Source: Fimbriosthenelais zetlandica
Taxonomy: Eukaryota
Assembly: GCA_977030845.1 (NCBI GenBank)
Contig: OZ365116.1
Coordinates: 20,212,001-20,276,000 of the forward strand
Reading direction: 5' to 3'
Length of the DNA: 64,000 nucleotides
Shown: positions 1 through 4,678 of the stretch, piece after piece
Numbering within the stretch: the first letter of the stretch is position 1
Layout of the letters: the number at the start of each line of letters is the position of its first letter
Notes under the pieces: generated by a model
The model's database searches: none
What the model was told of the DNA's origin: nothing
Seen by the model: only the letters and a program-made list of their open reading frames with translations
Position numbers and translations under genes: made by a program

Positions 1-1084
1 AAAGGACATCATTTAAAGGTGAATAAGCGCCATTAATAAAGTCAGGGTTTTCAGATTCGCAATCAAACTCATGTGGTACCATACCTTTTGGGCAATCGTA
101 ATCACCCTGACAGTCATAGACAATAGCATATGAATTTTTCAGGGAACAGGTTGTGTTTGATAATTGAGTGACTCTTAGCTGTGGGAGATGGTCACCATCA
201 TAAAGCTTTTTTCCAGTTTTCAGATTGCCTCCTTCACCATTGACAAGTATGTACTGGGGAACAACATTATAATTGTTCTGCACGGTCTCGTTCCCATTGT
301 CAACTGTTGGGTTTACAAAGGAAAGGCTGTCCCAGGTTTTAAGCACAGTGCAATTGACAGCATCAATGAAAAAAGATGGCCTACTTATCTTGCCAGGCCT
401 TTCTATTCGATAGGATAATCTGTAAGCCAGCATGGGCGTCACGTCTTCATTTAAACCTTCTACAAACACAACTAGGTCAACATCATTCTCCTCATCAAAT
501 GTCACCTCGGTTCGTAGGTGGCCTCGGTAACTGAGGGCACATTCTAAAGCCTTATTTGCAGATATTGACGGTAAAACTGAGGGTAAATCTTCCTCAATGC
601 CCTCCACTAAGTGACCTTTGACCTTACCAATCTTTTCACCATTCTTATCCACCTCCAACACTACAGCCTCACCCACCACGGGTAAACCTTTGTAAGTCTC
701 CACTAGTTTAAGCTTCTGCCTCCCTGAAGGTTTGTTCATCAGGGATTTAAAGTGTAAGTGTTCTCCTCGGCCAAGGTCGACTTTAACAGCAGTATGGTCC
801 GTGTTTATACCACCCTGACTCCCACCAATTGATCGTTTGTTCAATACGTGATGGCTTTGTTGATGAACTTCGATTCGTTTGGCACCATTAGAAACTATGG
901 TTTGAAAATAAATTCAAAGAGTGTCAGTGATAAAAAGATATCTAGATCCTAGAACAACAAACACGATTTATGTCAATCAAAAATATCAAAATACTGCCAA
1001 TATGACGAACAAAATTATGTCCTAGTTATAGAATTTACCTTGTAAGTAGAGCAGCAAAAGACAGGCATATATTGTAGAAAACAT
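1..1084 (-). CDS. M4 (thermolysin/vibriolysin-like) metalloprotease paralog B, 5' part; runs off the left edge of the window
   Basis: Not in the ORF track because there is no stop codon inside the window. Exon 1 is 1039-1084 (MFSTIYACLLLLYLQ, signal-like, donor G|GTAAAT, phase 1). Exon 2 is 894 to <1 after the acceptor CCATAG. It translates openly as ...KLVETYKGLPVVGEAVVLEVD...LAYRLSYRIERPGKISRPSFFIDAVNCTVLKTWD...GEGGNLKTG...INGAYSPLNDVL, collinear with the propeptide and catalytic N-domain of the 2002-4678 gene. Confidence 0.88.
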
Positions 1085-2001
1085 ATCGGATGATATATAG
1101 AGTCTGACCCAACACACGCAGCTAAACCAATAATGTACATACAGGAGTTGGATATGATCGGTGGGAAGTCAAATTTCTGGCTCCTGTCCATTCGAACAAC
1201 CCCAGATCACATATGTCCCTCAACCATCCTCATTCGATATAATACAATAACATCCCCAACAGGAGAATTTGGCAGGAGTGTTTGTAATACTCGGAAGTAA
1301 GTAGAACAAAGGGTCGTATTTAAAGTCGATTATTGTATCATCAATATCGATGTGTCACGTGTGGTAGTAGTGAACAGGGTTGTCCAATCCACGATTTGTT
1401 TCACCAATAATTGCATTATATATATCAAAGAAAACGACCATATTTTCATAATATATTGGAACATTTATTTGAATCAAGTGAATAGGTTACATAATCATCA
1501 TGACATAATTTGCAATTACATCTTAAGTAGGCCTTGTGGCAATGCCTCTACACTGGCTAAATGATAGTAAAATGACATTGTGGAATTTAACAGTAATATG
1601 TTCGAGATCATGCACAAACAATTGGTCCTTTCTCATCTTGATGAAATAAGTTCAACTAGACGTACCATTGTAAATTATACGTCTTTGATATTGGTTATTC
1701 AGACCATTATAATTGAGTTCATTGAGCATCAAGGTGTTCAGGCTTATTGCTTTTGATTAGAAAGTTAGTGAGCTTCAGCTTTACCACCGAGCAAAGCGTA
1801 CATTCTAACCTTCACATTAGAGACCGTCTTTGAACCTTCATAATGGAAGCCTTGTACTTCAAGATGATATTCACCATCTTGTGGGCGGCATAGGAATGCT
1901 GGTCCACCCAGAGTTCCAATGGCATCATACTCGTGTGAAATGCCATTTGGTCGTTGACCGTGTTTGATGTAGAAAGTAAGCCCTCCTTGTGGATCAGCAA
2001 T

Positions 2002-4678
2002 CTATGCCTGAAACATGACCTGGACTTTGTTGTCTATGAGAGTCTGTGGCATTGTGAAGGTGTAATATGAAGGCTCGTCTGTATTCAGGGTTTGCTCATC
2101 CATGATGGTCTGTACTGGTGTAAGAACCAGGAGAGTCACAGCAAGGTCATCAAAGGCAGTGAGAGAGATGGTACAAGGTGCCGCCTCACCACATTGTCCT
2201 GGTGTAGGAACAGTGAAAGTATCAGGCAGTCTACCGTGAGGAGCTCTTACATCGAACTTTACAGTACCAGCAGATACAGACATCTCAAGATCATAAACCT
2301 GATCTAGACTAAAGACAAGCTCCTTGACTGGTAAACCATAGGGATTCACTTTAAAGTTCATTGTTGTGTTGGCATCTATATTGATAGGTCCTGGTAATGT
2401 TGCAGCACCATCGTCAGAACAAGGAACAACACCAACTGCTAGGAAAGCATTGCTCACATCGGTGGACTTTAACTTTAAATCTTTTGCAGCTGAAACTACA
2501 CCACAAGCTGCCTCAGAAAAACTAGTTTCCGGTCCCCAGTAAAGAATATTAGCAAGAAGAAAGGCATGGAAGCTTTTCTGTATGTCCCATCCCTCAGTTG
2601 TGGCTAAATTGTAGAACGCCTTATTAAAGATACCACTACTTGAATGACTGTCCACTCCATAGCAATAATCTCTTAAGTGTCCAATAGAGAACCCATCCTT
2701 AGAAGGGTCCTTGAAATAGCGAAAAGACTTATTTGGAGATTTAACATCAGAGTAGCCAACATTCCAATCTACTTCTCCAAACAGGAAGTACTCAGAAGTT
2801 TCACCGGCCATGTCACTAAAGGCTTCACTAACAGCTCCAGACTCCCCGTCATTGTATAGCTCTGAATGAGCTGATGTTAGACCATGAGCCATCTCATGAG
2901 CCACCATATTAAGGGATGTCAAGGGATGAACAGCTTCACCTCCATCACCAATTAAAAGCTGGTCGCCATCCCAGGCAGCATTCTCCCACCTGTATCCATA
3001 CCTGACTAGAGCCTTCCATTGCTTCTTCCCTTCACTTCCCTTCATGAGGGGGTCACTCATGTTATACCAGTCACGAAGCATCTTTGCTGTAGTTCCAATG
3101 TGGAAGAAGACATCATTCATCGGTGAATAAGCACCATTGACAGGTTGAGCAACATCACCTTTCTCACAGTGGAACTGGTGCGGGGTCATCATTGAAGGTT
3201 CACAGTCAAAGCTGCCATTACAATTATAGACAAGAGCGTCACCATTTTCCAGTTGGCATGTACCGTTAGGCCACGCTAGTACTTCCAGTTTTGGGAGGTC
3301 ATACCCATACAAGTACTCTCCCACCTTATCATTGCCACCAATGCCGAACACTTTCCTCCTTGTAGCTACAGGGACATCTCTGTCGCCCGCCGACATCCTA
3401 CCATATCGTGTAATGGAGGCAAAGCTCATTGCGTCCCAGTGTTTAATTATCTGGCCATTTTGCGCATTGAGAATAAATGTTGGTTTTGAAATTCGTTGCC
3501 TCGTTTCAATTCTGTATGAGAGTTCATAGGCAAGGACAGCTTTCAAGTTGGCTCCTTGTCCAGTAACATAAATGACGAGACGGGCATCTCTATCAGGATT
3601 GAATTTGATTACTGACATGTCATCTTTAGCCTGCTGGACTGCCAATTGTAGGGCTTCGTCAGGATTGAAAAGAGGTTTGGTTAGAGGCAAATCGTCTTTC
3701 AAGCCTTTGACCAAACGACCCTGAACTTCACCAGTGAATTTATCATTACGATCAAGTTCTAGCACGACAGTCTCACCAATCACTGGCAGACCCTTGTATG
3801 TTTCCATCATCTTGACCTTGGTATGACCTTCTGGGGTCGTAAATTGGGAGGTGACCTTGAGATGTTCATCTGGAGCAAGTCCCAGCAAGGTCTCAGGAGC
3901 ATGGTCATTGGCTGTACGGAGTGATCGACGAATCCGATGATGTTCTAGGTTAATTCTGACCACGGCGATCACATCAGATACCATAAGAGCTGATAAAACA
4001 AGCAAGAAAAGCCATCAGAATAACGTCAGCTTAGGTAAAAATGGGGATGAAATTCGACTATGCTAATATACTAGGGTAAAGACCAACGGACCAGTTAAAG
4101 TCAAGGATGTGCAGAATTAAAATCACACTAACAGAAACCATATTTATGTATCAGTTAGGTTGCATTTAGATATTTCATTTCATGTGACTTTCTAAGTGAT
4201 GGATTATACCATGGGAAAAATTCCCTGTCAGGTCTTTGAGTCTCGCACAATTTGCCAATATTAGAACCCGCATTATTCCAGCAGTTAGGCCTATATGGGG
4301 GAATTGCCCTAGCTGCACTCCTCGTCTATAGTGGTTTATAATCATGTTACATATAAGATGGTTGTATAACAAGCGAATATACTGCTCTAGAAAAACACTT
4401 GACTCTGGATTGTTCTATATACATCACTCAGCTTCAAACATGGCAGGCTATTCTTGACAAAAACCTAGACATTTTGCTAGTATTTACATAAATATGGTCT
4501 TTTTCCATTCTGTTAAGCAATTATGTCAGAAGACCGACATATTATACAAATGTCAAAAATATGTCATAGATATATGTATCTATAAAACATGGCGTTGTTT
4601 TGTAAAGGACGATGAATGGAGCATCCACATATAAAAAGGTTTACACTCACCAGTAAATATACAGATGATTAGCTTCAT
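2002..4678 (-). CDS. Secreted M4 family zinc metalloprotease (signal, FTP/PepSY-like propeptide, M4 catalytic domain, C-terminal beta/PPC-like domains); 671 aa to the TAG at 2002, frame continues to 1765
   Basis: Exon 1 is 4651-4678 (MKLIICIFT, donor G|GTGAGT). Exon 2 is 3989-2002 after TTTTATCAG, giving MKLIICIFTALMVSDVIA. Motifs: WENAAWDG, the HEXXH zinc motif AHEMAHG, third ligand EAFSD, catalytic His in DSHSSSGIFNKAFY, and NGAYSPMND, all matching thermolysin/elastase/vibriolysin signatures. Confidence 0.93.

What the first reader, a model, noticed from the sequence alone, without database searches (positions are those of the whole stretch)
1..4678. Tandem bacterial-type M4 metalloproteases domesticated in an animal genome, sharing one signal-peptide intron
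Seen: two tandem minus-strand genes with thermolysin/vibriolysin architecture; copy A has all zinc and catalytic residues intact. Each has a phase-1 GT-AG intron within the signal-peptide-coding region, and copy A is otherwise a single ~2-kb exon, whereas neighbouring host genes have 3-13 introns. Established: family M4 is predominantly bacterial. Inference: an old horizontal transfer, then intron gain, then tandem duplication and strong divergence, possibly for digestion, defence or matrix remodelling. The introns and the physical linkage to ordinary animal genes argue against contamination.
Basis: partly seen in the sequence, partly recalled or inferred. Interest (0 to 1): 0.8.

Follow-up and report, generated by a model that had tools for sequence, protein, structure and literature searches.

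The report
Ancient bacterial-type M4 protease gene pair
Two neighbouring genes in this invertebrate genome encode secreted zinc proteases of a type otherwise almost confined to bacteria, but they belong to an old family shared with brachiopods and molluscs, so this is not a recent or private acquisition.

Summary
Two tandem minus-strand genes encode pseudolysin/vibriolysin-type M4 peptidases. Each has a short first exon and a phase-1 GT-AG intron inside the signal peptide. Copy A is otherwise one exon of about 2 kb.

Two corrections:
- Copy A has an in-frame TAG (2002-2004). It cuts off a conserved 78-codon tail.
- Copy A lacks the tyrosine that helps stabilise the reaction intermediate (Asn379). 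Zinc ligands, catalytic Glu, His and Asp are intact.

The interpretation needs rescaling. The family is not private to this genome. Relatives occur in Lingula, Aplysia, Lymnaea, a chiton and the cephalopod Argonauta. In a careful tree the animal sequences form one clade (93/81). An AU test does not reject that clade. The nearest bacteria are Pseudomonadota, at only 32-38% identity.

The signal-peptide intron has an acceptor at the matching place in all 9 genomic loci examined, including the annotated Argonauta gene. It therefore predates the split of these phyla. The A/B duplication predates the split of three species.

Most likely this was one very old bacterium-to-animal transfer followed by vertical descent. 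The donor is unresolved. No RNA or DNA runs were listed, so splicing and the TAG remain untested in this species. I found no paper on the family.

The parts
4651..4678 (-). Copy A exon 1: start codon, 9 codons and the first base of a split codon (N-terminal part of the signal peptide). Donor GTGAGT follows.
3990..4650 (-). Copy A intron, 661 nt, GT-AG, phase 1. GC is 0.35 against 0.45 in exon 2.
   Evidence: Acceptor at the matching place in orthologue L002 and in 7 further loci.
2005..3989 (-). Copy A exon 2 up to the in-frame TAG. It holds the rest of the signal peptide, the propeptide (FTP 3733-3864), the catalytic domain (Peptidase_M4 2872-3327, Peptidase_M4_C 2428-2862) and the first C-terminal beta-sandwich domain.
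3925..3936 (-). Furin-type dibasic site RIRR, followed by Ser, about 10 residues after the predicted signal-peptide cleavage.
   Evidence: R-x-K/R-R lies in the first 90 residues of 11/25 animal against 3/128 bacterial relatives.
2884..2898 (-). HEMAH zinc-binding motif (H364, E365, H368). The third ligand E388 is at 2824-2826.
2851..2853 (-). Asn379 at the position of LasB Tyr155 / thermolysin Tyr157. The tyrosine is lost in the A-type lineage only.
2644..2652 (-). D446 and H448, equivalents of thermolysin Asp226 and His231.
2002..2004 (-). In-frame TAG where the orthologue has a sense codon.
1768..2001 (-). 78 further in-frame codons: the conserved tail of the second PPC-like domain. It is followed by TAA at 1765-1767.
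   Evidence: (pN 0.25 against pS 0.69 versus the orthologue)
1464..1469 (-). AATAAA, a candidate polyadenylation signal of copy A.
1039..1084 (-). Copy B exon 1: start codon, 15 codons and the first base of a split codon. Donor GTAAAT follows.
895..1038 (-). Copy B intron, 144 nt, GT-AG, phase 1.
   Evidence: Acceptor at the matching place in orthologue L003.
1..894 (-). Copy B exon 2, cut by the window start. It holds the propeptide and the first part of the catalytic domain (297 open codons).
   Evidence: (64% identical to P0002)

Best explanation
The two genes are paralogues (A-type and B-type) of an old animal family of secreted, pseudolysin/vibriolysin-like M4 zinc endopeptidases.

ORIGIN. 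The family most likely arose from a single transfer of a complete bacterial pre-pro-peptidase gene into an early lophotrochozoan ancestor. The gene brought its propeptide, catalytic domain and PPC-like C-terminal domains. It has since been inherited vertically and duplicated repeatedly.

EARLY CHANGES. A short host-side first exon now supplies the start codon and the first half of the signal peptide, through a phase-1 intron. Many members also gained a furin-type dibasic site just after the signal peptide. The exon-capture origin of exon 1 is inferred.

LIKELY WORKING, inferred from the family:
1. The protein is secreted as a zymogen.
2. A proprotein convertase trims it at RIRR.
3. The FTP/PepSY propeptide folds and inhibits the catalytic domain, then is removed.
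4. Zinc held by H364, H368 and E388 hydrolyses peptides, with E365 as the base.

PECULIARITIES OF THE A-TYPE. The A-type lineage has replaced the transition-state tyrosine, so its rate or specificity probably differs. In this assembly copy A also carries a recent or allelic nonsense codon. It removes most of the last PPC-like domain but leaves the protease domain whole.
For: FAMILY AND FOLD
- Pfam domains are above their cut-offs.
- AF2 model has pLDDT 83.7.
- Foldseek matches MCP-02, PlM4P, ProA and LasB at TM 0.96-0.98, and the MCP-02 propeptide chain.
- The whole architecture matches Pseudomonadota M4+PPC clusters at TM 0.75 over 548 residues.

BREADTH
- Named members: Lingula anatina (3), Aplysia californica, Liolophura sinensis, Argonauta hians, Lymnaea stagnalis.

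ONE ANIMAL CLADE
- Careful IQ-TREE (108 rows x 457 columns): 35 animal rows are one side of a branch, support 93/81, found in 93% of bootstrap trees.
- On a second data set with 29 named bacteria, the tree with 33 animals held together is 68 lnL units better than the free quick tree, p-AU 0.97.

BACTERIAL SURROUNDINGS
- The outgroups, and every non-animal row whose organism or genomic context was checked, are bacterial.
- The best bacterial genomes (Aeromonas, Rheinheimera, Microbulbifer, Shewanella, Vibrio, Chromobacterium) reach only 32-38% identity.

SHARED INTRON
- A phase-1 acceptor lies 11-13 codons (6 in B and its orthologue) before the conserved R-R-V/I-D/N motif in 9 of 9 genomic loci. 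These include the annotated two-exon Argonauta gene and members of the basal and mollusc subclades.

OLD DUPLICATION
- win_A groups with P0001 and P0005. win_B groups with P0002 and P0004. Each branch has 99-100 support.
- The same A-then-B order occurs in L001.

SELECTION AND EXPRESSION
- pN 0.17-0.32 against pS about 0.7 in every segment, including the part after the TAG.
- Relatives are expressed: TSA transcript P0111 and an mRNA-like metatranscriptome contig L091 with an uninterrupted signal peptide.
Against: - No transcript or read evidence could be obtained for this species. The splice junctions and the TAG are therefore unverified.
- The position of the animal clade relative to bacteria is unstable. 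It is sister to P0127 and P0126 in the careful tree. It forms a basal grade outside the Pseudomonadota clade in the FastTree and quick trees. No donor can be named.
- Identities to bacteria are low (32-38%). Very old vertical descent with many losses is not excluded.
- Most clade members are unnamed ENA or Logan contigs. I cannot show that the family is absent outside Lophotrochozoa.
- The furin-site enrichment counts related sequences, not independent events.
- Copy A has a nonsense codon, Asn for the catalytic-site Tyr, and Ser for the conserved Asn before E388. It could be losing function.
Confidence: 0.68

Rival explanations
1. Ancient vertical inheritance. An M4 peptidase was present in early eukaryotes or early animals, was lost almost everywhere, and survived in lophotrochozoans. 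No transfer from bacteria to animals took place.
For: - The animal clade is deep and has long branches. It spans at least two named phyla besides this genome's own lineage.
- It is not robustly nested inside any one bacterial genus or family.
- Identity to any bacterium is at most 38%.
Against: - Every named member of the clade is a lophotrochozoan.
- All large Atlas clusters with this fold are bacterial.
- The literature calls M4 'almost exclusively' bacterial (PMC7851659).
- The complete bacterial pre-pro-catalytic-PPC layout is kept, including the start of the propeptide right after the signal peptide.
- The genes are nearly intronless apart from one 5' intron, unlike typical old animal genes.
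Confidence: 0.14
2. Copy A is a decaying pseudogene. The nonsense codon and the lost tyrosine mark loss of function, and only copy B is a working gene.
For: - In-frame TAG at 2002-2004.
- Asn379 in place of the near-invariant Tyr, and Ser387 in place of the near-invariant Asn.
Against: - The Tyr loss is shared with P0001 and P0005, whose frames are open. It is therefore an old feature of the A-type kept under purifying selection (pN 0.17 in the catalytic domain).
- There is only one stop and no frameshift in about 2.2 kb.
- The 78 codons after the TAG still show pN well below pS, so the stop is very recent, allelic or a sequencing error.
- C-terminal PPC domains of bacterial vibriolysins are dispensable for catalysis. 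This last point is from general knowledge and was not tested here.
Confidence: 0.15
3. Contamination or misassembly: bacterial DNA joined to an animal contig.
For: The protein family is bacterial in type. No reads spanning the junctions could be examined.
Against: - GT-AG introns with polypyrimidine tracts split the signal peptide.
- GC is 0.45 in the exon and 0.35 in the intron, inside a window of 0.36-0.42.
- No bacterial genome exceeds 38% identity.
- Orthologous tandem genes lie on Mb-scale contigs of other animals, and in annotated mollusc and brachiopod genomes.
Confidence: 0.01

Closest known systems
Pseudolysin (LasB) / vibriolysin (MCP-02, hemagglutinin-protease) / Legionella ProA: the pseudolysin-like branch of MEROPS family M4
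   Same: - Same fold: TM 0.96-0.98, rmsd 1.2-2.4 A, 37-43% identity.
- Same zinc site: HEXXH plus Glu in xEAFSD. Same Asp/His pair.
- Both pseudolysin disulfides (Cys30-58 and Cys270-297 equivalents).
- FTP-type N-terminal propeptide and beta-sandwich C-terminal domains.
   Different: - Encoded in an animal genome, with a spliceosomal intron in the signal peptide.
- Furin-type site after the signal peptide.
- Two extra cysteines in the N-terminal lobe (C256, C262).
- C-terminal domains too diverged for the Pfam PPC model.
- Copy A lacks the Tyr155 equivalent.
Predicted 'elastase-like', 'neutral protease-like' and uncharacterized M4 proteins of molluscs and brachiopods in RefSeq/GenBank (Aplysia XP_005102004.1, Liolophura XP_064608632.1, Lingula XP_013384835.1, Argonauta GAB1607520.1, Lymnaea CAL1533503.1)
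   Same: - Same clade in the tree.
- Same signal-peptide intron followed by one large exon in Argonauta.
- Tandem duplicates also occur in Lymnaea.
   Different: - Only 28-37% identical to copy A.
- The Lymnaea gene has 7 exons and no propeptide in its model.
- These entries are automatic predictions. I found no paper describing the family.
Other bacterial enzymes acquired by animals through horizontal transfer and then given introns and eukaryotic secretion signals (for example the arthropod cases reviewed in PMC4943190)
   Same: A bacterial-type secreted hydrolase is integrated in animal chromosomes, gains a 5' intron and signal peptide, and undergoes lineage-specific tandem duplication.
   Different: The transfer here would be far older: it predates the split of brachiopods, molluscs and this lineage. 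No donor lineage is recognisable any more.

Membership tests
MEROPS family M4 (thermolysin family), pseudolysin/vibriolysin-like branch | Peptidase_M4 (N-lobe) and Peptidase_M4_C (helical lobe) domains above the Pfam gathering scores | tested here: met
   Copy A scores 68.2 and 88.6 bits against cut-offs of 22.4 and 24.4. Copy B shows only the FTP domain and the start of the N-lobe inside the window.
MEROPS family M4 (thermolysin family), pseudolysin/vibriolysin-like branch | Glu-zincin metal site: HEXXH plus a third ligand Glu 20 residues after the second His, in the (N)EAFSD motif | tested here: met
   H364, E365, H368 and E388 in copy A. These are invariant in 32 animal relatives.
MEROPS family M4 (thermolysin family), pseudolysin/vibriolysin-like branch | Transition-state His (thermolysin His231 / LasB His223) with its partner Asp | tested here: met
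   D446 and H448 align with the LasB D-V-H.
MEROPS family M4 (thermolysin family), pseudolysin/vibriolysin-like branch | Transition-state Tyr (thermolysin Tyr157 / LasB Tyr155) | tested here: not met
   Copy A has Asn379, P0001 has Asn and P0005 has Gly. The other 29 of 32 animal relatives have Tyr. The B-type orthologues P0002 and P0004 have Tyr. Copy B's own residue lies outside the window.
MEROPS family M4 (thermolysin family), pseudolysin/vibriolysin-like branch | Thermolysin fold of the mature enzyme | tested here: met
   AF2 model pLDDT 83.7. Foldseek TM 0.98 and rmsd 1.2 A to 3nqx and 7ecc.
MEROPS family M4 (thermolysin family), pseudolysin/vibriolysin-like branch | N-terminal FTP/PepSY propeptide acting as intramolecular chaperone and inhibitor | tested here: met
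   FTP scores 30 bits against a cut-off of 21 in A, and 22.3 against 21 in B. The model matches the MCP-02 propeptide chain 3nqz_A at TM 0.76. Presence is shown. The chaperone function is not testable here.
MEROPS family M4 (thermolysin family), pseudolysin/vibriolysin-like branch | C-terminal PPC (pre-peptidase C-terminal) domain(s) | tested here: inconclusive
   No Pfam PPC hit. The model aligns over residues 3-650 with bacterial M4+PPC clusters at TM 0.75. The post-TAG tail aligns weakly with the PPC of P0127, E 0.003.
MEROPS family M4 (thermolysin family), pseudolysin/vibriolysin-like branch | Zinc-dependent endopeptidase activity | not testable with these tools
   Needs recombinant protein and an activity assay.
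Gene acquired by an animal from bacteria (horizontal transfer) | Physically integrated in host chromosome, with host-type gene structure | tested here: met
   GT-AG phase-1 introns. The same contig holds split Ras and GPCR exons. Orthologues lie on Mb-scale animal contigs. No read-level check was possible.
Gene acquired by an animal from bacteria (horizontal transfer) | Animal sequences form a clade nested among bacterial sequences | tested here: inconclusive
   Animal monophyly has 93/81 support and is not rejected by the AU test. The outgroups and the Pseudomonadota clade are bacterial. The attachment point shifts between analyses, and the one closest row (P0127) is of unknown origin.
Gene acquired by an animal from bacteria (horizontal transfer) | Absence from other animals and from close outgroups of animals | tested here: inconclusive
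   All 7 named animal species are lophotrochozoans. Most clade members are unnamed contigs. No taxon-labelled survey of animals could be run.
Gene acquired by an animal from bacteria (horizontal transfer) | Expression in the host | not testable with these tools
   No runs were listed for this genome. Relatives are expressed: TSA transcript P0111, and the mRNA-like contig L091, which lies inside the clade; L006 (P0127), of unknown origin, is also mRNA-like.

The most novel reading that the evidence does not exclude
A single transfer of a Pseudomonadota-type vibriolysin gene into the stem lineage of lophotrochozoans, probably before the Cambrian, founded a secreted protease family spanning several phyla. 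The family is so far undescribed in the literature I could search. Conversion to an animal gene can still be read in the sequence. A host-derived first exon is grafted by a phase-1 intron onto the remaining half of the bacterial signal peptide. A proprotein-convertase site was added after it. One paralogue line (A-type) has since dropped the transition-state tyrosine while staying under purifying selection, which suggests a changed activity.
Probability: 0.5. Interest if true: 0.6.

Novelty: new member of a known kind. Interest (0 to 1): 0.45.

Why it matters
Well-supported transfers of bacterial genes into animals that are old enough to be shared by several phyla are few. This family would give a datable example, older than the brachiopod-mollusc split.

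Its steps of conversion to an animal gene are still visible: a captured 5' exon that completes the signal peptide, a convertase site, and tandem expansion.

It also gives animal biologists an unstudied class of secreted zinc proteases in molluscs, brachiopods and worm-like lophotrochozoans. Their roles in digestion, defence or matrix turnover can be tested directly.

For this window alone the result is modest: two more members of a family already present as automatic predictions in public databases.

Tried and rejected
RNA AND READ EVIDENCE
- Two searches for public runs holding this DNA listed none. Read laying was therefore never used. The junctions 4651/3989 and 1039/894 and the TAG could not be checked.

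WIDER HOMOLOGUE SEARCH
- A profile search of the word-indexed protein database with the 32-sequence animal alignment returned essentially the same hits and no new named animals.

NAMING THE WINDOW'S ORGANISM
- A search with a neighbouring GPCR exon found only unnamed ENA contigs.
- Rfam and tRNA scans of the window found nothing.
- The 'annelid' label comes only from other agents' notes. It is consistent with P0111, but I did not verify it.

STRUCTURE DATABASES
- The AlphaFold DB cluster search hid the organisms, so it could not widen the taxon list.

LITERATURE
- Nine searches found no paper on animal M4 peptidases or their transfer.

EXON 1 AND SYNTENY
- Exon 1 of the orthologue in L002 was not found within 2.2 kb upstream.
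- No synteny beyond the M4 genes appeared between the window and L001.

REJECTED IDEAS
- Contamination.
- A transfer private to this species.
- Programmed readthrough of the TAG. I see no favouring context, from my own knowledge of such contexts, but this cannot be excluded.

TREE CAVEAT
- The FastTree and quick trees placed animals as a basal grade. The AU test showed that the short search had missed a better tree with animals united.

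
Full report
WHAT IS IN THE SEQUENCE

The minus strand of 1-4678 holds two genes. The window contains no N.

Copy A:
- It starts at ATG 4678. After 9 codons and one base comes a GTGAGT donor.
- The 661-nt intron ends in a pyrimidine-rich tract and AG at 3990.
- The frame then runs open from 3989.
- The spliced N-terminus reads as a normal signal peptide, followed by V-R-I-N-L and R-I-R-R-S.
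- Pfam finds the FTP propeptide motif, Peptidase_M4 and Peptidase_M4_C, all above their curated cut-offs.

Copy B:
- It starts at ATG 1084, with 15 codons and one base, then a GTAAAT donor.
- Its 144-nt intron ends in AG at 895.
- An open frame runs from 894 to the window start.
- Only 297 codons are visible, so copy B's active site cannot be judged.

A and B are 42% identical. An AATAAA lies at 1469-1464, about 300 nt after copy A's final stop. That leaves about 380 nt before copy B's start codon.

TWO CORRECTIONS TO THE OBSERVATION

First, copy A's frame is interrupted by TAG at 2004-2002.
- It continues for 78 more codons to TAA 1767-1765.
- This tail is 56% identical to the C-terminus of the orthologue P0001, which has a sense codon at that place.
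- It still shows far fewer non-synonymous than synonymous differences: pN 0.25 against pS 0.69.
- The stop is therefore recent, allelic or an error. The same reader noted it separately (s1-204003).
- It falls inside the last beta-sandwich domain. That domain aligns weakly with the PPC domain of P0127.

Second, copy A lacks one catalytic-site residue.
- Alignment to Pseudomonas pro-elastase LasB shows H364, E365, H368, E388, D446, H448 and both pseudolysin disulfide pairs in place.
- The position of LasB Tyr155 is Asn379.
- Among 32 animal relatives, 29 have Tyr there. The three exceptions are copy A, P0001 and P0005, which are exactly the A-type lineage.
- This lineage is under purifying selection (pN 0.17 in the catalytic domain). 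The loss is therefore an old, retained feature and not decay.
- From memory, this tyrosine contributes to transition-state stabilisation in thermolysin-like enzymes but matters less than the histidine. I did not verify that here.

WHAT KIND OF M4 PEPTIDASE

- An AlphaFold2 model built on the 32-sequence alignment has mean pLDDT 83.7.
- Its catalytic part superposes on vibriolysin MCP-02, PlM4P, Legionella ProA and LasB at TM 0.92-0.98 and 37-43% identity. Thermolysin itself is more distant, at 23-24%.
- The propeptide matches the MCP-02 propeptide chain.
- The whole protein aligns over about 550 residues with bacterial M4+PPC cluster models, TM 0.75.
- This is therefore a complete pre-pro-catalytic-C-terminal gene of the pseudolysin/vibriolysin type.

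WHO ELSE HAS IT

An exhaustive profile-free search gave 6926 hits. The top of the list is a set of about 34 sequences that share features with copy A.

Those that carry names are all lophotrochozoan animals:
- three Lingula anatina proteins;
- Aplysia californica 'elastase-like';
- Liolophura sinensis 'neutral protease-like';
- Argonauta hians;
- Lymnaea stagnalis.

One more, P0111, is a complete transcript in a transcriptome labelled Siedleckia nematoides. That organism is a gregarine that lives in a polychaete, so the transcript may come from the host worm. This reading is my inference.

Most other members lie on contigs of 0.1-7 Mb from ENA assemblies, without names.

The two closest sequences come from one sequencing run:
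- P0001 is 63% identical to A.
- P0002 is 64% identical to B.

A second species (ERZ25767047) has an A-type gene followed 2.7 kb later by a B-type gene on the same strand. This is the same order as in the window. A third paralogue lies about 25 kb further downstream.

Other agents of this scan regard this genome as probably annelid. I could not confirm that independently.

PHYLOGENY

Careful IQ-TREE analysis used LG+C20+F+G4 by PMSF, on 108 rows and 457 profile-aligned columns.
- The 35 animal rows form one side of a branch, with support 93/81, found in 93% of bootstrap trees.
- Inside it are a mollusc subclade (100/99), separate Lingula lineages, and an 18-row subclade (support 86/64) that holds the window genes.
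- A groups with P0001 and then P0005. B groups with P0002 and then P0004. Each of these branches has 99-100 support.
- The A/B duplication is therefore older than the split of these three species.

Placement relative to bacteria is less secure.
- In that tree the animal clade is sister to P0127 and then P0126.
- P0126 sits in a bacterial gene neighbourhood and groups with Colwellia and Alteromonadaceae.
- P0127 is a 2.3-kb mRNA-like contig of unknown origin, with eukaryote-like untranslated ends and two canonical PPC domains.
- With 29 named bacterial genomes added, a quick tree instead drew the animals as a basal grade outside a Pseudomonadota clade.
- An AU test showed that the tree with the 33 animals united is 68 log-likelihood units better. 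The quick search had missed it (p-AU 0.97).

My conclusions from the trees:
- One animal clade is favoured.
- It is surrounded by bacterial sequences.
- The donor cannot be named.
- The best bacterial genomes reach only 32-38% identity.

In every genomic locus I could read, a pyrimidine tract and AG lie in phase 1 a few codons before the conserved R-R/K-V/I-D/N motif that opens the propeptide.

| Locus | Gene | Codons before the motif |
|---|---|---|
| window | copy A | 11 |
| L002 | A orthologue | acceptor at the same site as copy A |
| L001 | A-type gene | acceptor present; distance not measured |
| L001 | B-type gene | 11 |
| L004 | Argonauta | 12 |
| L089 | mollusc subclade | 13 |
| L090 | basal subclade | 13 |
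| window | copy B | 6 |
| L003 | B orthologue | 6 |

- The NCBI model of the Argonauta gene has exactly this structure: a 46-nt first exon, an intron of about 2.1 kb, then a single exon.
- The 5-codon offset in B and its orthologue is best read as a small deletion or acceptor shift in that line.
- An mRNA-like member of the clade (L091) and the TSA transcript P0111 show an uninterrupted signal peptide of the expected length.
- Bacterial relatives start their propeptide with A-E/Q-R/K-I/V right after their own signal peptide. The second half of the animal signal peptide may therefore descend from the bacterial one, with exon 1 supplying a new start. This last step is inference.

A SECOND ANIMAL-SPECIFIC FEATURE

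A furin-type R-x-K/R-R site lies within the first 90 residues in 11 of 25 animal members with complete N-termini. It occurs in 3 of 128 bacterial ones (Fisher p = 6.5e-8). Copy A has RIRR; copy B has only K-R. The sequences are related, so the p-value overstates independence.

LIKELY MECHANISM AND ROLE

- Shown: gene structure, domains, metal site, fold, clade membership, purifying selection.
- Inferred: secretion, convertase trimming, propeptide-assisted folding and autoprocessing, and zinc endopeptidase activity. Also inferred is altered kinetics or specificity in the A-type.
- The biological role (digestion, defence or matrix turnover) is open. I lean to an extracellular digestive or degradative role because of the vibriolysin-like architecture and the tandem expansion, but at low confidence.

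NOVELTY

- The family is present in public databases only as automatic predictions.
- Nine full-text searches found no paper on it.
- The window genes are new members of a known kind: bacterial-type enzymes in animal genomes.
- The broader point, an old transfer spanning several phyla with a conserved captured first exon, would be worth a dedicated study.

Noticed in passing
window 2002-2004 and 1765-2001: An in-frame TAG interrupts copy A inside its last PPC-like domain. The 78 codons behind it are conserved and still under purifying selection.
   Followed up: yes
window 2851-2853 (Asn379); P0001, P0005: The A-type lineage alone has lost the Tyr equivalent to LasB Tyr155 / thermolysin Tyr157. 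In copy A and P0001 an aromatic residue sits one position earlier. Copy A also has Ser for the near-invariant Asn before the third zinc ligand.
   Followed up: partly
window 3925-3936; N-termini of P0001, P0107, P0109, P0111, P0112, P0115, P0120, P0174, P0276: A furin-type R-x-K/R-R site shortly after the signal peptide is common in the animal family and rare in bacterial relatives (11/25 against 3/128).
   Followed up: partly
L006 (P0127), 1-2294: This mRNA-like metatranscriptome contig encodes an M4 peptidase with a eukaryote-style 5' end, ATTAAA near the 3' end and two canonical PPC domains. It is sister to the animal clade in the careful tree but lies inside the bacterial clade in the quick tree. 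Its organism is unknown.
   Followed up: partly
L001 5786-6311: The A-type gene of the ERZ25767047 species is interrupted by about 525 bp where copy A of the window is continuous. This could be an extra intron or an insertion. The gene caller split it into two ORFs.
   Followed up: no
L092/L093 10001-12082 (P0108): A third M4 paralogue lies about 25 kb downstream of the B-type gene on the same contig and strand in the ERZ25767047 species. It is present on two contigs that look like haplotypes. A third member may therefore lie left of this window.
   Followed up: partly
L005 10001-21453 and 30288-31453: The Lymnaea stagnalis M4 gene model has 7 exons and no propeptide. It sits next to a second M4 gene. 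The family has gained introns and tandem copies in gastropods too.
   Followed up: partly
P0111 / P0272 (EukProt EP00918, TSA GHVU01225025): Complete M4 transcripts filed under the gregarine Siedleckia nematoides fall inside the animal clade next to the window's subclade. They are probably transcripts of the polychaete host in that data set.
   Followed up: no
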